DNA of 63,675 nt, from assembly GCA_030704615.1 (NCBI GenBank), contig CM060731.1, positions 70,618,001-70,681,675 of the forward strand, in the 5' to 3' direction. Every line of letters starts with the position of its first letter. The stretch's first letter is position 1. Made by a program: the position numbers and the translations under genes. The notes beneath the pieces were generated by a model. The model was not told where the DNA came from, searched no databases, and worked only from the letters and a program-made list of their open reading frames with translations. Shown here one piece after another: positions 5,822-28,724 of the stretch. The stretch comes from Takakia lepidozioides (taxonomy: Eukaryota > Plantae > Bryophyta).

Positions 5822-7010
5822 TCATCTCACACTACGAGGTGCAGGCTCAGGTTCATATGAAAGCTGCGCCTTCGACTTCCCCTTCCTGAAACTCCGACGA
5901 TGACGGTAATTGGTGTCTGATTCCTCTTCCTCCACTGGCGAGAGACGAGTATTAATCGAACTCCCAGCCTTTCGGGATGGTGTCATTCCACCAGATGGTG
6001 GTACCAGCACCTCTTGCACACAATCGACCACCTTTTGCCCAAGTGCTATCAAAGCCAGAGAGTAGCTATTCTCTTCTCCCCTCGGAACATCTGGGAAGAG
6101 CCGCACAAATGACAGACTGGCAAGCTTTCCTTGCCTCAGACATAACGTCTGAGTGAATGTACTCTAAACAAGATAACTTTCAAGCAGCCTCTCTTCCCCT
6201 CATAGACCATCGAGCACCTAGATCCCCAAATGTTCCATAGTGTGTATGCCCTAAGAGCAGCCCACACCGGACAAGAGGTACAAAGCCCATTTGAATTAGC
6301 ATTCAGGAGGAGCACTGCGGGGAGAAAGGGCAAAGAATGGTCCCAGAAGGCATAAACGGAAATGACTTTGCTCCAAGCCATGGCCGGGGTCGGGCAAAGC
6401 AGCAGACATTGCTCAATCGTCTTTGGTATGGGGCAGGTGCAAGAGCCGAGCATCCATGGCATGCTTTGTCGATTTCAGCGATGAACTCTGAGACAGGCAG
6501 GATACGATTAGCAATCTTCTAGAGAAACCTTGGGATTTTCGCGGCCCTATCTTTCCTCCAGATATCAGACCAGATAGCCTTCCAGGGTAGGTCCAGGCTG
6601 GTCACTTGATTCCATTTGGCATTCCATTTAGCCTGCATGAAAATCCTTTGGTTAAGCAGAGAGTAACCTTTTTTAATAGTGAAACCAAAAAACGGGTCTT
6701 GCTTTTTGGACATCCAAGCCCATTCGCCTAGATCGAATTGCAGTGACCTCAAGGGAGCTTTGAGGAACCATCTAAATGAGCCAGAGTAATGAGCTATCAC
6801 CACAAGAGGTTCAGGGCTCACCATTCCAGTGAGTCGACAGAAGACTCTAATGGCGAATAAGGGAGCTTCCAACATGGAAGTCCAGACATGGTTGTAGAGA
6901 TTACCAACGTTATCCGCACTGAACCTCCATCCAAAGAGAGAGGGGCCAGAGCGATAAGTTGCAAAAAACGCCTGTGGGTTAGTGCTTGCATTGCTCCCGA
7001 GCCAGCAGGG
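5822..7010 (-). mobile_element. L1-type non-LTR retrotransposon 3' fragment (zf-RVT region), degenerate
   Basis: KGYSLL...PWKAIWSDIWRKDRAAKIPRFL*KIANRILPV...CHGC...TIEQCLLLCP...AW...YTLWNIWGSRC is the zf-RVT/C-terminal signature. Stops and frameshifts present. Confidence 0.75.
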
Positions 7011-7016
7011 AATAGA

Positions 7017-7945
7017 TGGGCCTCGACATAGGAGACGCACAAGGATACATAGGAATTGCACTTGGTCTTAGATTTCAATTCTTCACACATGAGCCAACGG
7101 CACAGACGTCGCATTTGGGCCTCGACATAGGAGACTCATTTGAATACATAAGAGATTGCACTTGGGATTAGATGATACTGGACACTTGGGCCAATGGCAC
7201 AGACTACCCTAGAGGTTGGATTTGGGCCTCGACATAGGAGACGCACTTGGATACACAGGAGATTGCACTTGGGCTTAGATGACACTGGACACTTGGGCCA
7301 ACGGCACAGGCTACCATAGAGGTCGCACAACTTGGGCCTCGACACTGGACACATGGGAGATAGATCAATAATGATTAAATATATGACTACTCAATAGATT
7401 CACGGAAAAAAATAAACTGGTTTTTCAAATATATGATTGCATGTACAAACTTCTAACTCTTTCACCAAATTCCTATCTCTGAATTACATTAGTTTGTCGC
7501 TCATTTTGTTCATGTTTACAATATTCTTTAAACATTAGTTCATTCATGTTCCACACATTCTTTGTAACTAAACAAACATCCAACTTCATTTTAGTATATC
7601 GATTTCAATTCTTGACACATGGGCCTCGACATAGGAGATGCACTTGGATACATAGGGGATTGCACTTGGACTTAGATGACACTAGACACTTGGGCCAACG
7701 ACAAAGGCTACCCTAATAGGTATTAATATAAACTTCTAACTCTTTCACCAAGTTCCAACCTCTCTGAATCACATTACATTGTTGCTCATTTTGTTCATGT
7801 TTACAATATCTTCAAACATTAGTTCATTCATGTACCACACATTCTTTGTAACTAAACAAACATCCAACTTCATTTTCGTATATCCACACATGGGCTGCGA
7901 CATATGAGACACACTTGGGTACATAGGGAATTGCACTGGACCCAG
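7017..7945. repeat. Composite tandem repeat: about 100-110-bp unit (TGGGCCTCGACATAGGAGA...) in about 6 full or partial copies, interleaved with a duplicated about 155-bp AT-rich unit
   Basis: TGGGCCTCGACA or a variant recurs at about 7017, 7116, 7223, 7333, 7620 and 7891. Segment 7447-7600 is repeated at 7730-7885. Confidence 0.85.
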
Positions 7946-12737: not shown

Positions 12738-13057
12738 CTCATTTTAAGATAATAGCGTCTTCAATGGGCACGTGCGAGGTGGCCGGTGGCCCCGCGCACG
12801 GACGCCCGGCTTCGCCCACGACTGCGCGCCGTCGCCCGCAGCTGTAGCGACCGCGCCCCACCAGCAGCGCACGCGCCCGCCTTGCCCGCGCCCCCGTCCA
12901 GCGCGCGGCCAGTCCCCCGCTCATGACCCAACAGTCCGCCAGTCTGCCAGTCTGCCCACCAGTCCGCTGGCCAGTCCCCTGCCATCCAGTCCGCTGACGG
13001 CGCAGGATCTCCACCGTCCGTTCCCATAACCCATCCGAACCCTCCATTTTTTGGGCT
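12738..13057 (+). repeat. Left TIR of the MULE-like element
   Basis: Reverse complement of 26352-26682. The first about 45 bp and the inner block GGATCTCCACC.TCCGTTCCCATAACCCATCCGAACCCTCCATTTTT are near-identical. Confidence 0.9.
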
Positions 13058-14631
13058 GCGAAAATGGCAATGATCTTGCCACCAAATCCCGACCTCTATC
13101 TTTTGACGGCTCTTTGTTGTCCGATATTGCGGTAGGCGTTTCCATGCACGCGACTGTTCCTCTTTTGCACCCGATGCTCATGATGATGATGCGTGCTTGA
13201 ATATGAGAGGATTGTCTCAGCACTACAGCCACCATTGTGCATATGCTTCCACTATTTTTGCCTTACTGTTGTGCTTTCGGGAACCTTCGTTTTATGGTGT
13301 GGTTCTATGTCATAAATATGGAAAATGCAGACATCTGTCCTCGATAACGTCCTCTGCTTGTGATCCGTCATGATACGTTTAGCCCCTTCGTACTGCATCC
13401 CTCATGAGAGCCTTCACAAGTTTAATTCGTTAAAAGAACCCATGGGTAACATGGGCGCGAAAATGGTGGAAGCGTATGCACATGGGGGCGTGTATTGCAG
13501 ATTTCGTATCGGACGATGAGACTGTTTACGTGACCAAGTATAGCGGTTTGCATCCGTCGTGCATAAGTTGTGGAAAATGGTGGAGAATCTAAAGAAACCT
13601 AGCTTTGTGATGGATCCACATAGTATTATATAAGGGATGGCAGCACAAAAAAGCAATACGAATCGTCACGGAACACCATCCAGTCCTAAGGTCCTCAAAC
13701 ATCCACACGCACCTGCTGAATGCAGATGTCTGAGCCACGACGGGAGTAGGTGCATAATTGGTATATTGTCGCATTTGCCAGGAGACGGACCAGGCTGAGA
13801 CAATTGCATCCGTAACTGCGCGTGGATGTTTGAGGTCCGTTGTGCCGCGAGTCTATTCGTAGTGGGTTCGCTGGCCCGCCAGTGCTCCGGATATTCCCCT
13901 TATCGCGTGCATAACAGTTAGTTTGGAGGCGGTCTGCTGGAAGTCTGTCTGTTGGGATATCAGTCTGTCGCACTTGTGAATTTGTCAGTTTGTTGTGTCG
14001 GAAGTTTGTTGCAGTAAGTCTGTTCGACTTTTTATTTTCCCTCTAGTTAGTCTTTTGGCTTGTTCTCCCGCCAGTCTGGCGAAACGTCTGTCTGCTGGAC
14101 AGTTCTTCTCTATGGATTTCAGTCTGTTGGACTGTGCATGCATCAATCTGTTGTGCCGCGAGTCTGTTCGCAATGGGTGTATTCGACTTTCCTGTTTGTC
14201 CTTTACTCTCTTTTGTCTTCATTCCGCCCGCTTCTTTGCAAACCGGTCTGCTGAACCGGAGGTGTGCTCGACAATCAATCCCCGATGGATATCAGTCTGT
14301 TCGCCTGGTACTTTGTCAGTCTAGTCTGCCACCAGTCTCTTCGCAGTGTATCTGCCGGCAGGGAAGTGCCTCCAATATTCAAAGCCGCTTCGCCTCAATC
14401 AGTTTTATCGTTAGTCTGTTGAACTTACAGTCTGCTGGAAGTCTGTCTGTGGGACTCCTCATTTTCTCTGTCTATTGTGCCGGAAGTCTATTGGAAGTGG
14501 GTCTCTTCCACCTTCTTGTTTTCCCCTCAGTCCCCTCAGTTGAATGTCCTTCCAGTATTCTGCCTTCTTCTCCTGTCGGTCTGTTGAAGCAAAGTTTTTT
14601 TTCATAGATAGCAGTCTGTTGGACTGTCGCT

Positions 14632-15378
14632 GGGTGAATGCAAGGTTGACTGGACCAAAATGGACGTTACCGGCACAGTTTTAGATGACTGCAATTGATG
14701 GTGTCATGAATTGAATTTGAATTAACTCATTAAAACCAACAAATATATATTTCATTGGATTCCTAGCTTCAATATGCACCCATAGCAACTCTCCAATCAT
14801 AAATTCGATAAGAAATGACTCCGCTATGGACTTTTGAACACTGTCATTGTGGACTGTTACCGCAATGAATAGAGTTACAATGGACTCAAGTTCTCCTATG
14901 TGCCATTGGTGGATTCCATTGAAATTTGGACATAAGGTGGCCATTTTGGTCCACATCTTAGGTATGGATTTGAAGTGGCAAAATCATCTGTCATTTGACT
15001 CATATGGACTAATATATATAAAAACAATAGGCGTTTTTTGAAAAGTCCATAGCTCATCTTGTTTTTTGGATTTTGGGTGTCATTTTTTTTCTAGAACTAT
15101 AAAAACCTATAATCTTCAATGGCTAGGTGGCATATTGATTTTTTTTTGTAAACTCTAATTTTTAGTTTTTCATAATTTTTCTAAATAATAGACTAAAATA
15201 TTTAATAAATTATATCTTTAATATTTGGGATAGGACTCTTTACTAAATATGTTCAGTATACCATTATCTATCACTAAAAAGATATTTTGGATAGTATCCT
15301 CAACTTTTTGGTTTTTGGTCATGGACTTTCATGGAGCAGGATCTGCCGTTTTTGGTCCACTCAACCTTGCAACTGCCC
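14632..15378. mobile_element. 747-bp AT-rich MITE with GGG...CCC ends and 4-bp TSD (CGCT)
   Basis: TIR GGGTGAATGCAAGGTTGACTGGACCAAAA versus TTTTGGTCCACTCAACCTTGCAACTGCCC. CGCT lies at 14628-14631 and 15379-15382. The rejoined site matches the host repeat at about 14121-14160. Confidence 0.8.
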
Positions 15379-16358
15379 CGCTGTATCAGTCTGTTGTGCC
15401 GCCAGTGCGTTCGCTAGTCTAGTCAACTTTCCTATTTTCCTCTTGGTCTCTTTTGTCGTCAGTCCGCCCGCTGAACTGTCCGTCTGCTCCACAATCGTGT
15501 TGTATGGATCATGTCAGTCATTCTGCCCGTCAATTTGTCACTCAGTCCTGCCACGAGTCTTCTCGCAGTGGGTCTGCCGACCCACCACTGCATTCCATAT
15601 GTCGCGTATCTACCAGTCTGCTTGGGGTTCCGTCTCTTGTGATGTGTCTGTTGGGAGTTATTTTATCAGTCCTCCGTTTAGTCAGTCCTTTCGGTGTGGG
15701 TGTGGTGGACCGTCATTCTGAACACGTGGTAGCTTTCTAGACCGAGTAAATGCCAGTACTGCGGCAATCAGGCGCCAATGATATCACGCCATGTCATCAG
15801 TCTGCTCTTCGTCTCTAATGCTTTTGTCGTTATACAGTCGGCCCGCTGGACCGTCGGTCTGCTGTGCAGTCGGTCCGGTGGACTCTCGGCCCGATGGGAA
15901 ATGAGTCTGCTGCACGTGTGAGGACCGTGGATGAATTTAGTATGATGCATTTGTTCGGTGGACGTATTCAATGCGATGACGGCGGATAGTTGGCGCCTGT
16001 GAAATCGCGCCACGTTGGCAGTGCCGTGCCAACTTTCCCCCTTCTACTTCTACTTTCTTCTCATGCTCCCTGTATCGACTCCATTCTCTTCGCGCCTGTT
16101 TCTTCACACTGTTTCGTTTTTCTCTTTGCGTTTCCATCACCGTAACAAAAGAGGGCCGTTCTTCCCCAGGTGTGGAGAGTCGCGGTGAGCCGCAAAGCGT
16201 CGCAAACACGGTCGCCTTCATAACAATTTGAAGTTCATCGGCTCGGTGAGCTGTTTCCATTCCATTCTGTGTCTTTTTCTTGCTTAGGATGAGTTTAACA
16301 TTTTCGTAGGACCTCTGTCTGTCGCTCATTGTCCTTGCACCCTCGTTTCATTTTGCAG

Positions 16359-19300
16359 CAATGGAGGATGCTTGTGAAAAGGGTGGAGCGGACTGGGTGG
16401 ATTTTGTGCACCAAACCAGATTGAAGAAGGAGCGAAGATACTGGTACTCACCAGAGGAGTTTGATCATAAAATAGTGGAAACATTTGTAGACCTCCGCGC
16501 CCGGAAGCCCAAAAATTCGAATTGGCAGAAGGACAAGCTCTTCTGTCCTTTCTGTGAAGAAGTATCAAGGACAAAATCCACCTAAATCGGCATTGTGTTG
16601 ACACGGGTTGCAAGGAGACTGTTGCAATGATTCCACTGGATTTCAAGCCTTAGCCGATACTGAAAGAAATGTCGATTGTCAAAGAGGCCACAATGCGCAT
16701 GCACGGATCAGTGCTTGACCCCTGCACTTTGGAATTAGACGAAGTGCGCGCACGGTATGGCGTCCGTTCTGGTGGGCCGTCAATGGAGGATGTGTAAGTG
16801 CAGGGAACGCCGGACGCTGCTAGAAAACATAAACTGAGTGATGGGGCCCAAAAAAAAGAGAGGCAAAAAAAGGAGAAGGCTGCAAGGTCTGCTCGCGAGG
16901 CAAGGGCAAAATCCACGCAGCAGACTCAACCCCATCCTGGGCGGCAGACCCACACCATCAGTACTGATATTGAAAGTGAATCTGCTCAGGGCGAGCAAAC
17001 CATTATCCAGAATGATGACTTCGAAGGCTTGGAAGAGGTGACAAGTCCAGTGGACATTGACTTGCCTGACTAGACTGGGCAGCAAACTCACACAAATATC
17101 GCGACCCATGCCAGAGGTTTAGGGTCAAAACCAAAAACTCAACAGAGCACTGAAGGGCCAGTCTGCCCTGGCACATTGCGCTTCCTTGACTTTGGGCTTT
17201 TCCCACCAAAGTGCCCACCAATTGGGGATCCAGACTTCTTCCGTTATTTCTACAGAGTTGCCCAGTCAGGTCTGCTACGCACATTCATCCGACAGGCGGA
17301 ACAGAATTGGTTGAACAGTTTTGAAGATGAAGATGACGATGAAGAAGTAGAGGAGGTAATGGTCAGTCTGACCACCCAGTTTGTTCTCTGTGCTGTTTAC
17401 TGTGCTGTTTAAGTCCATCATGGGGGTCATGTTGCCTGATCAGTCTGGTCAATCCGTTGCGTTCTTTCCTCAGTCTGCTGGCTCAGTTCGCTCGTCAGTC
17501 AGTTAATTTTATATTGCTGCATTACTTCTTGAGTCCGTTTGTCAGTCCGCTGGTACAGTCCACTGGTACAATCTACTAGTTGGCTCCACCATATGTACGC
17601 ACGTTACGTCTGTGAGTCTGCTGGTCTGTGAGTCCAGTCCGTTGCATGAGGTGAATATAGAGTCCACGTCCAAGTTCTCTGCCGTGTACCAGGATAAACG
17701 TGTTTCTATTCGTAGGGCCATTCAGGCTTGGCGGATACCGAGCAATGATGCTCCTTTACAAGCGACTGCGGTGCGTGCAGAAGTGGACCATGTGCGGGAG
17801 TACATATTGTTGAAGTATCCTGGGTCATCTGCTGCTATAGCGGCATTACATATTCAAGACGCGTCGGGGGGGAATGAGTCTGGGACAGTCGAGTATGCCA
17901 TCCAGCAGACTCCCATTCAGCAGACCGTCATCCAGCAGACTCCAACGACTCCTAACGAGCAGCCTGTCATCCTGCAGACTTCAATGCAGCCCATCATGCA
18001 CATTGCAGTCTCCATTGTAGCCCATCATGCAGCCCATGCCCATGGGAAGACCTGTCATCCAACAGACTGCGGACTAGCAAACTGATAGCCAGCAGATTGA
18101 CTAGTAGACTGCCTTTCTCCCACATAGCATGGCTCTTTTTGCAATTTGGCGATTGCCATCACCGGTAATTTGACCCGGAGCTGAAGACCTCACACTTCCC
18201 CGGCTTAGGACCTGGGAGAAATTAATCCCCATTTGGATTGGCATAATGAGCTCCACCGGATTGTTGCGGACCGCCGGTGGTCATTTGTACCCTTTCATTA
18301 TTCCATGGAGTTTTCTATTGAGGAAGCCAACCATGTTCTAGAAGCCGCCTCTGCTGCTGCCATTGAAGCCACAACCGTCCAAATGCGTCGCCTCTACTTG
18401 TGTAGCTGATTCTCATGGATGACCCACGGCCTGAAGACCTCAGACGTATGCATATGGCACATCCAACCTTTGGGGTGTGAAGAAAGCATTTGTTCGGATT
18501 GACTGAGGAGGATTTTGAGCGCATGACAACTTCCTTCCTACAACACAGATGGATGCAATTTGGCAATTTCCACTCGCACAACAAGTTGATGAAGGATCTG
18601 CATAGTTTGAGGATGGACTTACTCATGGAACAGACCATTCACAGAAGTTTGTGGTGGATGACGCATTGCAGTGGTTTGCATTGGTGATGGAGCGAGCAGT
18701 ATTCAACATTGTTTTGCAGAATCCCAATGTCTTTAAAGTCCTATGGTGTGGGACCCCCACTGAAGACCGCATCGGCGCCATCGCTCATCTCGATGGAGCA
18801 TGCTTGTGCCGGCAAATCAAGGACATTGGCCTTGTTAGAAATCTCTTGGAAGGTAAAATATTCCGGGAATCTTTTGTGTTTCAGCTCCATTTCTTTTGCC
18901 CATTTGCAGAAACATGTGTTACAGGACGAGTTGATATGGGAGACAAGCAAGTGCAGGCTGCTTTCAACTCTTTTGCCGAAGGTGCAAGGGACCTTGTCTT
19001 GGCTTTACAAAGAGATCGGGAGACTGTCCAGCAGACTGACCACGAAAATGTCCAACAACATATTCCCCACAACACATGTGGGCAGACTGCCCAAATGCTG
19101 GAGACCGAGCATGTGCACCAGACCGTCCCTGGTAATAGGCCGGACCACTCCTAGCAGAATGCCGAGCACACACATACTCAGTATGTACAAACACTACTGA
19201 GCGGGCAGCGAATTTTGCAGACTTTGCAGTAGGCCGACGAACAGACCGGCCAACAGACTACCCCTCAGTCGACTGTGCAGCAGACCAGCAAACATGGCTA

Positions 19301-22095
19301 GCAGAGTGCCCCTCAGCAGACTGTGCAGCAGACCGGCAAACCCAGCCAGCAGATTGCCCCTCAGCAGACTGTGCAGCACACTGGCGAACCCACTCAGCAG
19401 ATGGCCGAACATACTGTCCAGGAGACTAACAGCCAGTCTGTTCACTGGATTGTGCAATAGACTCGGATGCATTGGCCTCACCGGGACCCTGTGGACGAAT
19501 TTCTGCAGAGTTCCCAACAACATGTTTTTGGATCTGCCAGTATGAGTGTTTTGAGCAAGTCCACTTTTTCCCCAGGCACATTCACTGACGACGTCATCAG
19601 GTCACTGGTAAAACATTCTTATCCAGCTCCCCGTGGCCTGCCTTTTATGACCTTCCAGCTCAGTCCCGTTTTCGTGCGCTCAGTGGCGAAAGCCATAGAT
19701 GAGTCTTACGTGATGACCGAACTCAATCTGGGAACGCAAAACCGTATCATAGATCTTACAGAAGAGTCTGAGGATGCAATTGCCGGTGGGTCTTCCATAC
19801 ATGTTCATGATGTTTCCCAAGTCCATGGAGAAGCCTACAAGATCATAATACCCAGCCGGCTGTCCACCAGATTGACCAGCACACTGAACAGTCAACACAT
19901 GGAAGGACTACCGAGCAACCTGCGGCGGGCCAGCAGACTGTCTGCATTGATGAGCGGACTGAACCACAGACTAACCAGCAAACTGCACGGCCTGACCAGC
20001 ACACTGTTCACTTCACAGAGGGAAGGACTGACAACCACCCTGCCACCGAGCACAGTGCCCACATTGATGAAGAGACTGAACTACAGAGTCGCCAGCAGAC
20101 TGCACAGTTCACAGACGGAAGGACTGACGAAGAACCAGCGGCCGAGCAGAACCCACATTGAGCAACAGACTGAACATGCTGGTAGGCACACTGACGAGGA
20201 ACCACATGCGGCGCAGACACAGTCTGGTATAACGCTGGATTACATAGAATCTGCTCCCTCACCCCTTGGGCAGGTTGTGCTGTTTCCTCTTTCAGCACTG
20301 TTGTTTATGTTTTAGCACATTGTGAAATTGGGCTAATTTGCCATTTTGCTCGGTATCCTCACAGGATGATCGTCCCTCCGTCGGTAGACTGTCTACTTCT
20401 GAGGACGTGACATCTTCCGCCTATGCTGCAAACGTGGGATCGACAACCAAGAAAGGTGTGGTGGTGAGCACGCCCCCCGATGTGAGGGTTAGTTCTATGC
20501 ATGCGACCCACAAAACTGCAAAGACAGGTCCAGCAAGTGTAAACAAACCTGCTGACCAGCTTCTGTTGCGAAGTAGGGCGGCAACGCTACGTTTGTCTGC
20601 TCTATCCAGCCCGCCTACAGCTGTCCTTGCTTCCTAGGGGAGAGGCAAAGCCAAGAAGTGGACTGTTGTGGACCATGCTGAGGAGGTTGAGGAGGGTCCG
20701 AGTACCAAGAGACCGGCGAAGAAAAAGTCTGGCGTCTTTATGAACAAGAACCGCAAGCTGGCCTTGGACATGGACAAAGATGTGGGTCGTTTCCTGGAGC
20801 AGCACAGGTGAGTACTGTACTCAGTCTCCTCGTTTGTCTTTGTCGTTAAGTGCTTTGCGGTCTGTTGTGGTCAGTCTTGTCACCCTGCTCGGTCTGTCAT
20901 GTTCTGCACAGTCTGCTCTGCAAACCGGTCTGTTGTACTTAGTCTGCCAGTACTCTCAGTCTCGTGCGGAAGTGAGTGTTCAGTCTACTGATGAACTGTT
21001 CAGCCTGTAGAGTGTTTGGTACCATGTTGACGTCGGTCTGTTCAGTACATGAGGTTTCCCGAAGGATGGTCTGCTCTGTGCAAGATGGGTGCTCAGTTTG
21101 GCAAAGCACATGCTATGCACGTCAAGGCGGGTAATTCCATGCTGATGTTTTTTGAAGAGGACCCACGGTTTGAATGCGGACTGTCTCCGGATGACATAAA
21201 GGCGCTCCGAAAGGTTGAGTCAAAGTGCACAAATAGATTCATGGAGTAGAGGTGTCGATTCTATAAGAAGTCGGTTGAGGTAAGACTATTGCTGTTCTTC
21301 CAACGTCGGCTTGGACGGTGTTGAAGTCATTGGGGGCGGGGCAACATGAAAGCCTTCTGGAGGTCTTCAAAGGTTGCCTCAGCACTGAACGACTGGGCAA
21401 GGACTTGAAAGAGTGCAATTTTATTTTGGTGCCAATGGACAAATAAGAACTCTTCCGAGTCTGCTGAGACTGAGTCTCTTGAGTCAGAGTCTGGTTTCGC
21501 AATGTCCTCTTGACTCTGAGCGATTAAATTGACCTCTATATCTGTCCAGTGGACAAGGTTTGAAGATTGAGTCTGCTGAGTCAGCTGAGTGCTCAGTCTG
21601 CTGGGTGTCAATCTGCTGAGTCTGCCCATCATGACTGTGCAATGACGCCACGTTCTTTGATATCATTGCACGGGGCACTGGGGTGTTTGTATCATCGACC
21701 TCCACAAGGGCTGTTACACTCACCTGAACTCTATCAGGGACATGCATAGTTGTCCCTTTGTTCTAGGGTGGATTCGGAAGCTTCATGCTGAGTGCTTAGG
21801 GTACTCGATGGACTCACCGGAGTGGCACGAGATTTTCCAAGCATTTCAGTTCCACGCGCCTGATGTGCCCCAACAACCATTCAGCTAGGAGTGTGGCTTT
21901 TATGTCATGTCATTCATTCAAGTGTTTTATAAGTGGGCAAAAGTCAGAGGAAATGTCTCCAAGACTGCAAAGCCAGAGAGAGGAACACCTTTCACGAATG
22001 ACTGGTTTACTTTCAAGTTTGCACTTCGGCAGCAAATGCAGTGTGCCCAGTATATCATGCGGGGGTTGGACAATCTAGAGAAACTGCTCTCATGA
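16359..22095 (+). pseudogene. Transposon-borne multi-exon gene with N-terminal C2H2-like finger and C-terminal Ulp1/peptidase C48 (SUMO protease) domain
   Basis: FCPFCEEVSRTKS..RHC near 16541. Putative exons at about 16359-17356, 17693-19181, 19509-20272, 20364-20807, 21046-21440 and 21672-22095. The last exons encode DLKECNFILVPMD / GHWGVCIIDLHKGCYTHLNSI...VPQQPFS*ECGFYVMSFI (Ulp1 HW, D, Q and CG motifs). In-frame TAG at 21886, other stops and mutated splice sites present. May represent more than one gene. Confidence 0.75.
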
Positions 22096-22605
22096 GTATG
22101 ATGTACTTGTCCTATGAAGTCTGTGTACTGAAAATAAAAAATGCGAGTCTTTTCGCTTACTATTCCAGTGGTGATTGACGAGCACTTTTGTGTACTGTGG
22201 GTGCTGGCATGTTTTGTAATGTTGTCACTAGACTCAATGGACACAATGGTCTCAATTTTTTCATGCATTGTGCACCCGAGTCTGCTGAGCTTGAATGTGC
22301 AAGCAGTATGCTGCCGAGGCTTGGACTGGTGGGTCTGGTACCTAGTCTGGTAGGCACCATGTCCATGAGTCCGTTGGGACACTGGATGGGCATGAGTCGT
22401 TAGGGAGGTAGTCCACTGGGAGCGTGTCCATTTTGAGTCTGCTGTTGTGGATGAGTCTGCTTGAGACTTAGTTTGTCCAGTAGTCTGCTGGGAGAGTTGC
22501 AGGGATGAGGTGGGAGTGTGGTGAGCAGATGTTTGGAGTGGATAGCGAACTGGGCAGCAGAGTGACTAGCAGACTGGCTTACTGGCGTGTGCAGTCTGCG
22601 GACCG

Positions 22606-22790
22606 TGAGTCTGTTGGGAGACTGTGTGTGAGTCCATTGGGAGACTATGTAAGAGTCCGCTGGGAGACTGTGTGGGAGTCAGTTGGGAAACTGTGGAGGA
22701 GTCCATTGGGAGACTGTGCAGGAGTCCATTAGGGGACTCTGCAGCCGTCTGATGGGAGTTTGTGCCGGAGTCTGCTGGGATTGTGGAGAC
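22606..22790. repeat. 23-bp minisatellite (about 8 copies) between the convergent MULE genes
   Basis: Units such as GTGAGTCCATTGGGAGACTGTGT. Most carry an inverted AGTC/GACT pair. Confidence 0.8.
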
Positions 22791-22875
22791 TGTAGATGAG
22801 TACTGTTAATGTGCACATGAAAGTGGACGGACTTGTATTTCAGAATGGGCTTATGCTACCACAGGAATTGCATAA

Positions 22876-25800
22876 TTATATTGTCTTCTTGGTGACACCT
22901 ACATGACTTGAAACCTTGTGAATTTTCGAGTATATATGTGCTGCAGGTGCAGGTGCAGACACCCTCTTGGTGGTTCTCCGCAAAACCCTAGGCTGGATTT
23001 TCCAGGCCTCCACGAAATCTCGTCTCATTTTCAGAGACATGTTGTTGTTGTCGTTAAGAGGATGGAAAGCCTTCGCTGCCGCAAGGTGCAACATTCCAGC
23101 TGTACTTTTCGCCATGATATCAACAAGCTGCCCTCTGCACATACAAAGAGCAGATCGGGCATGTGCCTCCACGTATTTGTCATCATCTACAATGCGAAGT
23201 ATGTCTGCAAATTCTTGTTCCATTGAGGCTGAGACCTCCAGAGGTGCCTCGTCGTAGGGGAAGTCGTCCGGAGGAGGTCTTTCCATGAACTGATTAGATT
23301 CGTCGTTGACGCCGATACCATTGCCTAAGAGCAAGTTAGATAATCCTCCATGAATGGTTCCCAGTGCCATGCCACAAGCGCGCACAAGGAGGCCATCATG
23401 CAGGTCAGGGTGAAGCATCTTCAGGACACGGACCTGATGCTTGCATAAGCTTCCCTTCATTGCCCATGGGCACGTGCAACAAGCCCAATCGCAATCAGGA
23501 TTGTAAACAATGTATGTTGTGCCGGGGTGGTTGTTGCTGAGAATGTAGGCTGGTTCACCAAGACTCAAGGGAAGAGTAGCATTCTCAGCAGGAATGTCTC
23601 GTGCTGCAAGTATAGAACTGGAAATGTATTTTTTGTGTTTGTCATTTCTTATGAACCCGTGGGTCTTCAAATGGATTGCGTACCAGTAGTGTGTTAGCAC
23701 ACGGCCAGTGAGCTCCCATATAAGCCAGTCCACTCTACGACCACTCATCTTGTCTTTCCCCATGGCAAGTCTTGCCTTCAGATTTCCATGGTATGCCTCA
23801 ATGCTGGCGTTTGTGTCTTGGCTGGCATGAGGGACATGGCGCATCTTTCCTTCGCCTCTTCCAGGCCTTAGACATCCCCCACCTGCAGCGCTCTTATCCT
23901 TAGCCTCTGCAGACTTCTTAGTTGTGGTTATGGGGCTGTTGTACACCACATTGCTATTTTGGGCTTCCAGTACTGCTCGATCGTTTTCTTGCATGATTGC
24001 TTCACTCGGAGTGGACTGGTACAACGACCTGTATCAGCGGGCAGAGCCACTGGACTCACCCAGTGGATAGTACAATGCCATGACCTTGATGTGTTGGAAT
24101 AACCCCATTGGACTACCCAATGGACTTCCCCGTTGGACTTCCCCGTAGCTAGGACTGGGGCAACAGACTGCATCAGCGGATTGCCCCATTGGACTGCCAC
24201 AACAAACTACCAAGCGGACCCACATCGGACTTGCCAGCGGACTGCCGAGCGGACTTGCCAGGGACTGTCGAGTGGACTTGGCAGCGGACTTGCCAGCAGA
24301 CTGCCGAGTGGACTTGACAGCGGACTGCCAAACGGATTTGCCACAGACTGCTGAGTGGACTTCCCAGCGGACTTGCCGGGGACTGCCAAAGGACTTGCCA
24401 ACGAACTGCCGAGCGGACTATCAGCGGACTTGTATGAATCGTCTGGCGCAGTGGACTGACCCAGTCCACTGACCCACTGGATGACTTGGCCAGTGGATTT
24501 TCCCAGCGAACTGCCATCGGGGTTCGCCACAAGAGCTTGCCAGTGGAATGTTGCAATGGACTGCTGCAGTGGACCTCGACAATGGACCGGTGCTATGGAC
24601 CAACAAACTTACCGAATAGCGTTGATTTCTGCGTCGGCATTGTCCACAATGAAGGCATTGGGTCGCCAGCTCGGCATATCTGTGAGGAGTGAATCGCGCA
24701 AGGCTCTCATCCACGGCACCAGGTCTGTTGTCCGATTACTCACGGATAGGATATAGGCAACTGGTATACCGTTCAACCACTCGTCGAAGACCATCAACGT
24801 GTACAATGGGAACTGTTGGAATGCACAATGTCAGATGGTCAGAGCATGCAAATTCCGCTTAGTTCTACACCAGAAGACTTCATAAGAGTGATGAGGTCTG
24901 CAGCGGTTCACAGTGGGTCTGCCCCTCGGTCTTCTGCAACGTACACATGAAAACATACAGAAAGGGTCAGCACACCAAATTTTATGTGAATGCTGCATGG
25001 TACTATGCTATCATGCTCCCACAAGTCCATGGAATCGTTCGAATAGTATCTTGTCATGATTTGTCCCAAAGGTTGCATGCGATACGGACATGTCCTAATT
25101 CCAGCATTCATCGTTTCTGCCACGGAGTCTGTATGCCAATAGTGGATGTCAAATCTCCATCAAAATGCGAATGTTGGCTCTAATTTCTCCTCTTGATAGA
25201 AAAGGATTCTGGTCTCTCCACATGCGCACACTCTCCGCATCATCGGCGTGCTTTTTGAAGGTTTGCCATGCACGTTTCTCGGCAAGGTTGCGAACATCTT
25301 GCTCCAACAAGAAATCATCACGGGTCCATGCATTGCCCAAGCCGGTGTTGTGCATCACGTGCTCTTTATGCTCCATCATGATTTGGGCGACCGACATGCC
25401 TCGGCACAAACACTCGACGACCCAGGCTTTCAATTCCTCGCTAATGTGTGGTGCATAAGCGTGGTGGGTGTTCCTGAACTCAGCGGACTTCCCATGCGAG
25501 GATTTCCCTTGCGCATCTGTATGCTCCATGTTGTTGAAATACGTGAGAACACAGATGTCAGGGGCGAGATAGCATTGCTGGACCTTGAAACAGCATTGAC
25601 AACCACACTTATAAGACTCTCCATACTCCGACTTCTTTCTCTTTGGGCCTTTATGAGGGCAAGATGTTCCAGCACCCACAATAGGTCCTCCACACTTCAG
25701 TTTTGGATCCTCCACTATTGCCTTGTTGGTGCGCTTGTCATCAGGACCGTAATAGCATTGATACCTGGACATAAAATTCAAAAATCGATATCCAACGACT

Positions 25801-26202
25801 TGTGGAAGCATAAAATCAGAGAACTCGTGAAATAAAAAATGGCAACAGACATGCAATGAAATGTTAAAAGGACTGAGGATGGTGCACACATAATACTGGA
25901 CAGAAATGTGTTGGATCTGGGTGATTTTCGCGTGCCGGGTTTCACTTTAGAATAGACATTCACCCAGGGGTAGTCCTCCAAACTCTCCTCTCCCAAGACA
26001 AAGTCACCAACTCTATCCCAAGGTATGCAGGCCTTTCAACACACACTCGCACACCCATAAACCCATGTTGCGTCTCACTCTTCCAATGGAGATACTTCAT
26101 GTTGAAGGGTCCTAGTTTTGGTGTTTGCAAACATCGTCGAAGAGGCCGTATAAGCGGGCTTTCCGTGATCAGTATATCATCGGGTTTTGCTTCCACGTCC
26201 AT
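22876..26202 (-). pseudogene. MULE-type DDE transposase with SWIM zinc finger (At4g13970/At1g60560-like family), disrupted
   Basis: Motifs: ACIPWDRVGDFVLGEE; YQCYYGPDD; GCQCCF...EHTD.QG..SHG...APHISEEL; TRDDFLLEQDVRN; IGIQTPWQ...ATFGTN (first catalytic Asp region frameshifted); FPLYTLMVFD...GIPVAY; AFIVDNA; SQDTNASIEAYH..LK; RRVDWL; SWIM CTCPWAMKGSLCKH. Introns and frameshifts present. Confidence 0.85.
24200..24435. repeat. 11-12-bp tandem array GCGGACT(T)GCCA in a transposase intron
   Basis: About 18 degenerate GGACT-containing units in direct tandem. Confidence 0.8.
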
Positions 26203-26351
26203 GCCCTAAAACAATACAAATGACACGCTTCTGAATCTGCAAGAAACGCGCTGCAGTACCCAGGACACGATCGACAACGTGTCAGGAGATCAGTGTGCAC
26301 ATTCGCGGTTGCTGGCAAGTGGCAGACAGCAGGGATAAAGGTTTCAATTGT

Positions 26352-26682
26352 AGCCCTAAAAATGGAGGGTTCGGATGGGTTATGGGAACGGATGGTGGAG
26401 ATCCTCCGTCGTCAACGGACTGGATGGCAGGGGGCTGGCCAGCGGACTGGGAGACTGGGAGACTGCTGGGCAGCGGAGTGACAGACTGGAGGGCAGCGGA
26501 CTCATGGGCGGGGGACTGGCCGCGCGGCGGACGGGGGCGCTGCTGGTGGGGCGCAGTTGCTGCAGCCACACCGGCGGCAAGACGACCGCGCGCAGCAGCG
26601 GGCGGGGGGCCGGGCGCTCGTGCGCGGGGCCCACCAGCCACCTCGCACGTGCCCGTTGAAGACGCTATTATCTTAAAATGAG
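26352..26682 (-). repeat. Right TIR of the MULE-like element
   Basis: Reverse complement of 12738-13057. Confidence 0.9.
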
Positions 26683-27139: not shown

Positions 27140-28724
27140 ATGGCTACTGATTATGGGCTTGGGGCTGGACTACTGCGTCTCCACCAAGAGTCGATCACAG
27201 GGAAGAAAGATGGTGTAATGTCAGCAAGGAGTGTTCTGAAGGAGCGGGTTATATTCCTCTTCTCACTTCTGCTGGTAATCAAGGTTGTCTGGGATCGCTA
27301 CACATCCAAGCTACCCCCGGGACCAAAGTCATGGCCAGTTCTGGGCAACCTCCCTCTGTTGTTTGCGAAGGCCCGGAAAGGTGAGCAGCTCCACAATATT
27401 CTACGCGAATTTGGCAAAACATACGGCCCTGTAATGACAGTGTGGGAATGTTGCCTACAATTGTCATCACAGATGCGGAAGTCGCCCATGAAGCTCTCAT
27501 TGTACAAGGCACAAACTTTGCTACACGGTCGTGCGCGCCGTCTCGAAATATCCTGACCTCTGGGTACAGCACCTTGTGGTCTGCAACCTATGGCCCATAT
27601 TGGCGTGCAATGCGGAGACTGCTGGTAGCAAATGTACTGAACTCGTCCAAAGTGTCGTCATGGAGACCGGAGCGGGAGGAGGTCGTTGACGACTTGTTGC
27701 AGAGACTTACAGCGCAAGCGGCAGACAATGCGGGTGTAGTGCCTCTAGTTTCGAACTTTCGCTTGAGTATGTTGAAACTTCTGATTCACATGGTGTTCGG
27801 AAACAACTCAAGAGATTATTTTGATGAATCCACCACCAAAGAATTGGAAAAGGCTATTCGTAAGTTGCTGGCGATAAGCCACCCGAAGCTCATGGATTTC
27901 TTCCCTCTTGTGCAGTATCTACCAAGCAGCCATAATCGAGAATCGCTAGCTATCCGGAATGAAATCGTACGGTTGTTGGGTCCGGTGGTTGGCGAAGGAC
28001 TGGGGAACCGGTGCTTGGCACATACCTAGACACACTACTTGCTATGAAAGCTGATGGAGAATACGAGATGTCAAGAACTACCATCGTGATGCTTTGCGCA
28101 GAGGCTTTCACTGGAGGCCTTGACAGCACAGCGAATGTCCTTGAGTGGGGGCTTGCCCATATGATGGACAACCCCGATATTCAGCAAAAACTGTACAGAG
28201 AGATCGAGATGGTTGTTGGCTCAAGGCCAGTGACTGATGCCGACATAGACAACTTGCCATATCTGAAGGCAGTGATAAATGAGACGCTAAGAAGACGGCC
28301 GCCTGCGCCGCTTGGTTTTCATCATGGCGTGACACAGGCATGCAAACTTGCAGGCTATGACATTCCTTCAAATGCCATAGTTTTCTTTCACTTGCAGGCT
28401 ATCTCTAGCAATCCTGAAATGTGGAGTAATCCTTCTGAGTTCAAACCAGAGCGGTTCCTTGATGCAGCCGTGGATATGACAGGTTCCAGAAAAATCACAA
28501 CAATTCCTTTTGGAGCGGGCCGTCGAATTTGTCCTGGGATGGGGGTAGGCTTGCTTCATACCCAACTTTTTCTTGCTAGTCTGGTGCAAGCATTTCAATG
28601 GAGCACACCGAATGGGGAAGCTGTGGACATGACAGAGAATTTGGAGTTTACAGTAAACATGAAGAACACGCTGTACGCTTCCATCAAAGAGCGGCGCAAA
28701 CCTGGCCTACCTTGCAATCTTTGA
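27140..28724 (+). pseudogene. Intronless cytochrome P450 (CYP71 clan, CYP77/CYP89-like) with two frameshifts
   Basis: PPGPKSWPVLGNL, YGPYWRAMRR, I-helix AFTGGLDSTA, ETLR, FKPERF and heme motif PFGAGRRICPG are split across three ORFs (27140-27556, 27442-28029, 28011-28724). Frameshifts near 27445 and 27995. Confidence 0.88.

What the first reader, a model, noticed from the sequence alone, without database searches (positions are those of the whole stretch)
12738..26682. TIR-bounded transposon whose transposase belongs to a family usually seen as conserved plant host genes, paired with a Ulp1 protease
Seen: 320-bp TIRs enclose a minus-strand DDE/SWIM gene and a convergent plus-strand Ulp1 gene. 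From recall of the Arabidopsis SWIM zinc-finger genes At4g13970/At1g60560, the match runs full length. Examples are IPWDRVGDFVLGE vs IPFARVDDFVRGE, CYYGPDD vs CSFGPDD, APHISEEL vs APYISEDL, GIQTPWQ vs GIQTEWQ, AFIVD vs GFIVD, and SQDT...EAYH..LK vs SQET...EFYH..LK. Inference: this is a once-mobile member of the lineage from which those host genes were domesticated. Ulp1 cargo is known in KAONASHI/VANDAL-type MULEs, but I do not know it in combination with this transposase clade.
Basis: partly seen in the sequence, partly recalled or inferred. Interest (0 to 1): 0.8.

Follow-up and report, generated by a model that had tools for sequence, protein, structure and literature searches.

The report
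Decayed Mutator transposon with Ulp1 gene
This is a real but broken 14-kb Mutator-type jumping gene of a non-flowering plant; its cutting enzyme belongs to the same protein family as two conserved, unstudied flowering-plant gene families (AT1G60560-like and a second, probably AT4G13970-like), but it is a distant cousin of them, not their direct ancestor.

Summary
TIRs of about 320 bp (12738-13057 / 26352-26682) enclose a minus-strand MULE/SWIM transposase gene (26202-22876) and a convergent plus-strand gene ending in a Ulp1/C48 protease domain (about 21279-22095).

Both genes are pseudogenes in this copy.
- Transposase: an in-frame stop, a frameshift, His in place of the first catalytic Asp, a lost splice donor, loss of the CxxH segment to a short-word array, and a 92-nt frame-breaking insert.
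- Ulp1: Asn in place of the catalytic Asp, and a stop just before the catalytic Cys.
- No target-site duplication is detectable.

The transposase is homologous end to end to the AT1G60560 orthogroup.

In a maximum-likelihood tree the angiosperm genes nest among fern, liverwort and conifer sequences, with a multicopy Taxus family as sister. The window copy falls in a separate, well-supported subclade. An AU test rejects it as their direct sister (p = 0.004).

C48-carrying MULEs are already known. The scan has already reported this same host-gene link, and word-saturated Ulp1 MULEs, on other DNA of this genome. I found no paper describing the host-gene link.

The parts
12738..13057 (.). Left terminal inverted repeat, GC-rich, begins CTCATTTTAAGATAATAGCG; carries several CCAGTC words
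26352..26682 (.). Right terminal inverted repeat (reverse complement of the left one; 84% mean identity with indels, terminal 27 nt identical)
13058..16300 (.). Subterminal spacer with no protein-family hit, dense in CAGTC-type words and short tandem repeats
16361..21246 (+). Upstream open-frame pieces of the plus-strand gene (ATG at 16361; pieces such as 18606-19151 and 19461-20312). Exon structure and function unresolved, no homologues found; a 48-bp x3.3 repeat lies at 19249-19406
21279..22095 (+). Ulp1/SENP-type C48 protease region. His motif GHW at 21661-21885 (Pfam hit). Asn in place of the catalytic Asp (HLNS). QQ oxyanion motif. In-frame TAG at 21886-21888 directly before ECGFYV (catalytic Cys). 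Gene stop TGA at 22093-22095
22607..22772 (.). 23-bp tandem repeat (about 7 copies, GAGTCC/GAGACTG type) between the two convergent 3' ends
22876..23850 (-). Last transposase exon: catalytic Glu motif (SQDTNASIEAYHGNLK), SWIM zinc finger (CCTCPW...CKH), C-terminal tail, stop at 22876-22878
23842..23933 (-). About 92-nt insert, not a multiple of 3 and without GT..AG ends. It separates ...KPKIAMWCTTA (frame 1) from RHVPHASQDT (frame 0), which adjoin in relatives
24040..24611 (-). Degenerate stretch where relatives encode the CxxH motif (CLWHVRR) and about 85 further residues. Here there is a stop after ...EINAIR, loss of LWHVR, and about 400 nt of GGACT-word tandem array (24226-24432)
24612..24821 (-). 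Exon with the second catalytic Asp (NAFIVDNADAE); weak Pfam MULE hit (E 0.0035); good CAG acceptor
24822..25048 (-). Intron conserved with relative L004, whose intron has GT..AG at the same codon. Here the donor reads AT instead of GT
25049..25179 (-). GIQTPWQ and first-Asp region: in-frame TGA after GIQTPWQKR, a frameshifting short deletion, and VSHATFGTN in place of SMDATF(G/A)TN (Asp to His)
25152..25800 (-). Exon with the N-terminal WRKY/GCM1-like zinc-finger signature (YQCYYGP...CGCQCCF) and helical region (APHISEEL...)
   Evidence: (E 7e-43)
25960..26202 (-). 5' end: putative ATG at 26202 (MDVEAKPDD, resembling MDTVESIDD of P0140) and the IPWDRVGDFVLGE piece at 26035-25960, which lie in different frames

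Best explanation
This is a dead, non-autonomous copy of a long-TIR Mutator-like (MULE) cut-and-paste transposon in a non-seed plant genome.

Inferred mechanism for an intact element, from family knowledge: the transposase binds the TIRs through its N-terminal WRKY/GCM1-type zinc finger. It cuts and pastes with an RNase-H-like DDE domain that carries a CxxH motif, followed by a SWIM zinc finger. A second, convergent gene supplies a Ulp1/SENP-type cysteine protease, as in KAONASHI/VANC-Ulp1 genes of Arabidopsis VANDALs. The element's non-coding DNA is saturated with one short word (ARCRGACT). By analogy with VANC target motifs, these could be binding sites for an element-encoded protein that counteracts silencing.

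Shown here: the TIRs, the domain order, the homology, the lesions and the word enrichment. In this copy both genes are inactivated by several independent lesions.

Evolution: the transposase belongs to a MULE family that is multicopy in liverworts, ferns and conifers. One branch of that family was tamed into two or three conserved angiosperm gene families (AT1G60560-like and a second, probably AT4G13970-like). The window copy is a collateral relative of that branch.
For: TIRs. Collinear homology of all exon pieces to Adiantum, Riccia, Taxus and angiosperm proteins. Relatives pass the Pfam MULE cut-off (P0019 44.1 bits, P0029 29.1, P0117 59.1). Relative L004 has about 400-bp TIRs, the same transposase-plus-convergent-gene layout, an intact CLWHVRR stretch and a GT..AG intron at the same codon. 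Lesions. C48. Word: AGCAGACT 25 copies against 0.1 expected from the rest of the window, CAGTC/GACTG 113 against 19. Tree and AU test. Host-gene status of the angiosperm clades (71-88% and 52-79% identity across angiosperms). Multicopy Taxus family (18 members at 90% or more, an identical protein on two chromosomes, a shared internal deletion).
Against: No target-site duplication. Splicing is inferred, so some apparent lesions could be unrecognised introns. The tree uses one exon (209 columns) and is unrooted, because no FAR1, MUSTANG, MuDR or VANDAL outgroup was available. The role of the word and of Ulp1 rests on analogy only. The partner gene of L004 shows no similarity to this one, so the Ulp1 pairing is not shown to be a trait of the clade.
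Confidence: 0.85

Rival explanations
1. One reading: this element belongs to the very lineage from which AT1G60560/AT4G13970 were domesticated, as their closest mobile relative.
For: End-to-end homology and shared motifs.
Against: The window groups with P0001 and metagenome or Logan fragments in subclade B (99/91 and 98/82). The host clade (100/99) is sister to the Taxus multicopy family (99/93) inside subclade A. The AU test rejects window+P0001+host as a clade, p = 0.0044, although that group was named after the tree had been seen.
Confidence: 0.06
2. Composite locus: the TIRs, the transposase and the Ulp1 gene do not belong to one element. For example, a Ulp1-bearing element could be nested in, or recombined with, a SWIM-MULE. 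That would also explain the missing TSD.
For: No TSD. The partner genes of the closest TIR-bounded relative L004 are unrelated to this Ulp1 gene.
Against: The same short word saturates the TIRs, the spacer, the Ulp1 gene's introns, the intergenic repeat and the transposase's degenerate segment, and stops at the TIR ends. No second TIR pair lies inside. Unverified scan notes describe the same transposase-plus-Ulp1 layout on other pieces of this genome.
Confidence: 0.08
3. The genes are still functional, and the apparent stops and frameshifts are unrecognised introns or assembly errors.
For: Splicing was not observed directly. One real intron is conserved with L004.
Against: Asp to His at the first catalytic Asp and Asp to Asn in C48 are substitutions, not frame problems. 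The CxxH segment is uninterrupted ORF in L004 but absent here. The TGA lies inside the conserved GIQTxWQ-to-D1 block. The conserved intron's donor is AT.
Confidence: 0.03

Closest known systems
KAONASHI / C48-MULEs, including VANDAL elements whose VANC gene carries a Ulp1 domain (Hoen 2006; van Leeuwen 2007; PMC4948706; review PMC13317346)
   Same: A Mutator-superfamily element carrying a second gene with a Ulp1/C48 protease domain. Non-coding DNA is filled with a short element-specific word, as are the VANC target motifs.
   Different: It has long (about 320 bp) TIRs, whereas VANDAL/KI elements are described as non-TIR. The host is a non-seed plant, whereas the review dates the VANDAL Ulp1 capture to the monocot-eudicot split. 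The transposase is from the AT1G60560-related family. No VANC homologue was detected. Both genes are decayed here.
AT1G60560-like 'SWIM zinc finger family protein' and the second angiosperm clade ('zinc ion binding', probably AT4G13970-like)
   Same: Same domain order and motifs end to end: IPxxRVxxFxxGE, YWCxxGP...GCxCxF, GIQTxWQ, D, D, E (IEAYHxxLK) and SWIM. Identity is 32-43% in the conserved blocks.
   Different: The host genes are about 720 aa or about 1000-1170 aa, and 52-88% identical across angiosperms. I did not inspect their flanks for TIRs or count copies per genome. They have Arg in place of the CxxH His while keeping D, D and E. The window copy has TIRs, is decayed, and lies in another subclade.
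FAR1/FHY3 and MUSTANG (known MULE-derived plant genes)
   Same: Same kind of event: a MULE transposase with a WRKY/GCM1-type finger, DDE core and SWIM finger tamed into a conserved host gene.
   Different: Different clade. The exhaustive search with the 385-aa exon found only 512 representatives at E<=1e-3, whereas 18,744 FAR1 genes are reported in 80 plant species (PMC8599713 abstract). This is an inference; no joint tree was built.
Animal ZSWIM1/ZSWIM3 (Pfam PF21056)
   Same: Relatives P0019 and P0117 pass the PF21056 cut-off (40.0 and 36.9 bits against 27.2) alongside PF10551; other relatives (P0029, P0040, P0301) score below it. Some AT1G60560 orthologues carry a precomputed PF21056 hit.
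   Different: Similarity at Pfam level only; no phylogenetic link was tested.

Membership tests
Mutator-like element (MULE) | Long terminal inverted repeats | tested here: met
   About 320 bp, 84% identity, terminal 27 nt identical
Mutator-like element (MULE) | 8-11 bp target-site duplication | tested here: not met
   The flanks cttttgtca and aggccattc share nothing
Mutator-like element (MULE) | MULE-type DDE transposase domain (PF10551) | tested here: inconclusive
   The window exon scores E 0.0035, 18.2 bits, below the 27.6 cut-off. Relatives that align collinearly pass it (P0019 44.1, P0117 59.1 bits). The family profile hits the exons at E 1e-21 to 3e-53
Mutator-like element (MULE) | Catalytic D, D, E plus CxxH motif | tested here: not met
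   In this copy D1 is His and the CxxH segment is lost; D2 and E are present. Relatives P0007, P0001 and P0019 have all of them
Mutator-like element (MULE) | C-terminal SWIM zinc finger (CxCxnCxH) | tested here: met
   CCTCPW...CKH aligns with the family. The Pfam SWIM score is weak (E 0.006, 16.6 against 19.6)
AT1G60560 / AT4G13970-type host genes | End-to-end homology with the orthogroup | tested here: met
   tblastn, profile search and motif columns. P0301 is named 'like AT1G60560'. AT4G13970 itself is only inferred
AT1G60560 / AT4G13970-type host genes | Placement inside, or as direct sister of, the conserved angiosperm clade | tested here: not met
   It falls in a separate subclade; AU p = 0.0044
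AT1G60560 / AT4G13970-type host genes | Immobile conserved gene without TIRs | tested here: not met
   TIR-bounded and pseudogenised
KAONASHI / VANDAL C48-MULE | Element-borne gene with a Peptidase_C48 domain | tested here: met
   Pfam E 1.8e-4, above the cut-off. His, Gln-Gln and Cys motifs are in the right order, but Asp is Asn and a stop precedes the Cys
KAONASHI / VANDAL C48-MULE | Non-TIR termini; VANDAL-clade transposase; VANC-type gene | tested here: not met
   Long TIRs are present. No VANDAL or VANC sequence was on hand for comparison, so the clade and VANC parts are untested
KAONASHI / VANDAL C48-MULE | Short family-specific motif arrays in non-coding DNA | tested here: met
   ARCRGACT-type word: AGCAGACT 25 against 0.1 expected, AGCGGACT 16 against 0.4. 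Binding is untested

The most novel reading that the evidence does not exclude
The AT1G60560-like genes and the second clade (probably AT4G13970-like) would be a third, so far undescribed taming of a Mutator transposase in the seed-plant lineage, beside FAR1/FHY3 and MUSTANG. Their mobile relatives survive in conifers, ferns and bryophytes. The tamed proteins keep the D, D and E residues but have replaced the CxxH histidine. Bryophyte members such as this one pair the transposase with a Ulp1 gene and a private DNA word, which would be an independent VANDAL-like self-protection layout.
Probability: 0.4. Interest if true: 0.6.

Novelty: new member of a known kind. Interest (0 to 1): 0.4.

Why it matters
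The conserved AT1G60560-like genes and the second angiosperm clade have no known function. Showing that they nest within a family that is mobile outside flowering plants suggests what they are: a tamed MULE transposase, probably a DNA-binding regulator like FAR1/FHY3. It also gives a comparative series for studying how a transposase is tamed: mobile in bryophytes, ferns and conifers, fixed in angiosperms, with the CxxH His lost and the DDE residues kept. A long-TIR, Ulp1-carrying, word-saturated MULE in a non-seed plant also bears on whether the VANDAL-type anti-silencing layout arose more than once. This particular copy is a fossil and adds little beyond serving as one more example.

Tried and rejected
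- A plasmid search with the TIR was irrelevant and found nothing.
- An exact TIR-end pattern in metagenome contigs gave 0 matches.
- The scan's sequence look-up with the TIR came back blank.
- An exact-product look-up of the 282-aa ORF was not on record.
- The ESM Atlas search of the 182-aa plus-strand piece gave only sub-threshold hits.
- tblastn of all plus-strand pieces against the relatives' loci found nothing significant.
- Pfam gave no hit on L004's partner ORFs.
- TIR searches around the Riccia genes found only AT microsatellites in L007 and nothing in L008.
- DNA for the Adiantum and Taxus loci was not retrievable.
- The organism could not be identified with my tools. Earlier scan notes say a moss, probably Takakia; I did not verify this.
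- Papers: the two gene identifiers occur in only two papers, whose titles concern downy-mildew resistance in Brassica rapa and a database of fusion transcripts, and which I did not read. They are absent from the supplements of PMC5715367. Hoen & Bureau 2015 is not held.
Exons were searched separately by reference.
- Rejected idea: that GTAAGT at 24611 simply starts an intron hiding an intact CxxH exon. No CLWH-coding piece exists in any frame of the element.
Full report
**Observation**

Four collinear inverted-repeat blocks join 12738-13057 to 26352-26682. Aligned, the two ends are 84% identical over about 320 bp, with several indels. They share an identical 27-nt terminus beginning CTCATTTTAAGATAATAGCG, which occurs nowhere else in the window and never in shuffles. 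The 9 bp outside the two ends (cttttgtca / aggccattc) do not match, so no target-site duplication is visible.

A Ulp1 domain lies on the plus strand: Pfam Peptidase_C48 scores E 1.8e-4 and 21.8 bits against a cut-off of 20.7 on 21661-21885. A weak SENP2 alignment covers the catalytic His block. The two genes end 780 bp apart, tail to tail.

**The transposase gene**

I built no joined or repaired model.

A profile made from 13 full-length relatives hits these pieces:
- 25946-25152 at E 7e-43
- 24830-24612 at E 1e-21
- 24033-22879 at E 3e-53
- weakly, the IPWDRV, GIQTPWQ and KPKIAMW pieces

Together they cover profile positions 25-678 of 777. tblastn with Adiantum, Riccia, Taxus, Amborella, Perilla and Hibiscus proteins is collinear.

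The domain order, read from motif columns, is:
- IPxxRVxxFxxGE
- a WRKY/GCM1-like finger signature (YxCxxGP...CGCxCxF)
- GIQTxWQ
- the first Asp (DATFGTN)
- the second Asp (FIVDN/D)
- CxxH
- the Glu motif (SQDTNxxIEAYHxxLK)
- a SWIM finger (CxCxW...CKH)

Pfam on the window pieces alone is weak: MULE E 0.0035, SWIM E 0.006. Relatives pass the MULE cut-off: P0019 44.1 bits, P0029 29.1, P0117 59.1. P0019 and P0117 also pass PF21056, the ZSWIM1-3 RNaseH-like family.

**This copy is broken**

I compared it with the closest usable relative, L004. L004 is an ENA metagenome contig whose transposase is split by a canonical GT..AG intron directly after ...DATFATNENK. Against it, the window copy shows these lesions:
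- an in-frame TGA after GIQTPWQKR
- a short frameshifting deletion before the first-Asp motif
- VSHATFGTN, that is His (CAT) in place of the catalytic Asp
- AT in place of the GT donor of the conserved intron
- a stop after ...EINAIR
- loss of the CLWHVRR (CxxH) motif, and replacement of most of the following 85 or so codons by about 400 nt of GGACT-word tandem array at 24226-24432. In L004 this stretch is uninterrupted ORF (P0007).
- a 92-nt insert that breaks the frame between ...KPKIAMWCTTA and RHVPHASQDT
- a putative ATG at 26202 that is in a different frame from the IPWDRV piece

**The Ulp1 gene is broken too**

Its motifs read ...GHW...HLNS...VPQQPFS[TAG]ECGFYV... The residue aligned with the SENP2 catalytic Asp is Asn. 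A stop sits directly before the catalytic Cys. No acceptor site allows the His exon to open without an in-frame TGA.

The upstream 5 kb of plus-strand open pieces has no detectable homologues.

**Relatives**

The word-index search with the 385-aa exon gave six unnamed hits, so I ran the exhaustive search. It found 512 representatives at E<=1e-3, with a best identity of 44%. Named full-length hits are:
- Adiantum (P0019, P0033)
- many Riccia sorocarpa paralogues
- a Taxus chinensis cluster of 18 members at 90% identity or more
- Cryptomeria
- the angiosperm proteins P0140 ('SWIM zinc finger family protein'), P0112/P0184 (Amborella, 1138-1173 aa) and P0143 (Magnolia, 1048 aa)

P0140's orthogroup is about 720 aa and 71-88% identical from Magnolia and Nelumbo to Lamiales. 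It includes P0301, annotated 'like AT1G60560'.

P0143's orthogroup is 52-79% identical across monocots, magnoliids and eudicots. Several members are named 'zinc ion binding'. That fits AT4G13970, but I could not check the Arabidopsis protein itself.

The Taxus family behaves like a transposon. It has many near-identical copies, an identical protein on two chromosomes, and a shared internal deletion of the D2-CxxH region.

L004 carries about 400-bp TIRs (6914-7313 / 16830-17230) around a transposase and convergent ORFs. Those ORFs show no C48 hit and no similarity to the window's partner gene.

**Phylogeny**

I built a careful IQ-TREE analysis (LG+C20 PMSF, 70 rows, 209 columns of the last exon). 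It gives three groups:
- Group A: ferns, one Riccia gene, Cryptomeria, the Taxus family and an angiosperm clade. The angiosperm clade (100/99) has three sub-clades: AT1G60560-like, Amborella/Magnolia/Arachis-like, and a Phoenix-type group. Taxus is its sister (99/93).
- Group B (98/82): the window exon with P0001 (99/91), metagenome and Logan fragments, and Riccia P0029.
- Group C: other Riccia MULE-domain proteins.

Forcing window+P0001 together with the angiosperm clade costs 32 lnL units, p-AU 0.0044. The caveat is that I named this group after seeing the tree. The tree is unrooted, because no FAR1, MUSTANG, MuDR or VANDAL sequences could be fetched.

Indirect evidence suggests the family is distinct from FAR1. 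Only 512 representatives were found, against the 18,744 FAR1 genes reported in 80 species (PMC8599713 abstract).

The host clades keep D, D and E but have Arg in place of the CxxH His: SLWRIRR and CFWRVRH.

**The DNA word**

CAGTC/GACTG occurs 113 times in the element against 19 expected from the rest of the window. The core AGCAGACT occurs 25 times against 0.1, AGCGGACT 16 against 0.4, and AACAGACT 13 against 0.4.

The word runs in blocks of uniform polarity through the TIRs, the spacer, the partner gene's introns, the intergenic 23-bp repeat and the transposase's degenerate segment. It stops at the TIR ends. This resembles the VANC target-motif arrays of VANDALs (review PMC13317346). Nothing here shows what reads it.

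**Literature**

[quoted passage not shown] The review dates the VANDAL Ulp1 capture to the monocot-eudicot split.

The identifiers AT1G60560 and AT4G13970 appear in only two papers. Their titles concern downy-mildew resistance in Brassica rapa and a database of fusion transcripts; I did not read them. The identifiers are absent from the supplements of PMC5715367. No paper combines 'SWIM zinc finger family' with transposase domestication. Hoen & Bureau 2015 is not held, so prior description cannot be excluded.

**Earlier scan notes (leads, unchecked unless stated)**

- The same stretch was flagged for the CAGTC word (s1-462243). I confirmed the enrichment.
- Two follow-ups on other copies in this genome reached the same host-gene link and the same 'distant cousin' caveat (s1-473623, s1-469996).
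- Other notes describe Ulp1-carrying, word-painted MULEs of this genome and call the organism a moss, probably Takakia (s1-459675, s1-493550). I could not verify the organism.
- s1-470150 reports a CAGTC(T/C)G-saturated 12.3-kb MULE on another piece, possibly another copy of this family.

So the scan has found this before on other DNA.

**Verdict**

This is a genuine long-TIR MULE carrying a Ulp1 gene, but it is a fossil. The 'progenitor lineage' inference holds only at the level of the broad family. It is a new member of a known kind, and the host-gene link is a modest, apparently unpublished point of interest.

Noticed in passing
window 12738-26682: The element is saturated with one short word (core AGCAGACT/AGCGGACT, i.e. 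ARCRGACT; CAGTC/GACTG 113 against 19 expected). It runs in blocks of uniform polarity and ends at the TIR boundaries. One array (24226-24432) sits where relatives have coding sequence for the CxxH region.
   Followed up: partly
window 27442-28724 (+): A cytochrome P450 gene (Pfam p450 E 1e-18 and 4.5e-66 on two adjoining ORFs in different frames) starts about 0.5-0.8 kb beyond the right TIR. The element therefore sits just upstream of a host gene, a position I recall as typical of MULE insertions (from memory, not tested here).
   Followed up: no
L004:6914-17230 (ENA metagenome contig ERZ24794498 NODE_250): A TIR-bounded relative (about 400-bp TIRs) with an apparently intact transposase, split by one GT..AG intron, and three convergent ORFs (476, 304 and 117 aa) with no Pfam hit. 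This is a different, unknown partner gene in the same transposase subclade.
   Followed up: partly
proteins P0140, P0301, P0112, P0143, P0323 (angiosperm host clades): All examined host-clade proteins keep the D, D and E residues of the transposase core but have Arg in place of the His of the CxxH motif (SLWRIRR, CFWRVRH). This may be a signature of the taming event.
   Followed up: partly
Taxus chinensis proteins P0056 and P0156-P0169: An 18-member cluster at 90% identity or more. The members I aligned or read (P0056, P0163) lack the D2-CxxH segment, and an identical protein is encoded on two chromosomes. This looks like an amplified deletion derivative and is the closest TE-like relative of the angiosperm genes. 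A convergent gene lies 4-7 kb downstream at the two P0156 loci. No DNA was retrievable.
   Followed up: partly
window 22607-22772: A 23-bp tandem repeat (about 7 copies) lies exactly between the two convergent gene ends. It is built from the same GAGTCC/GAGACTG word family.
   Followed up: no
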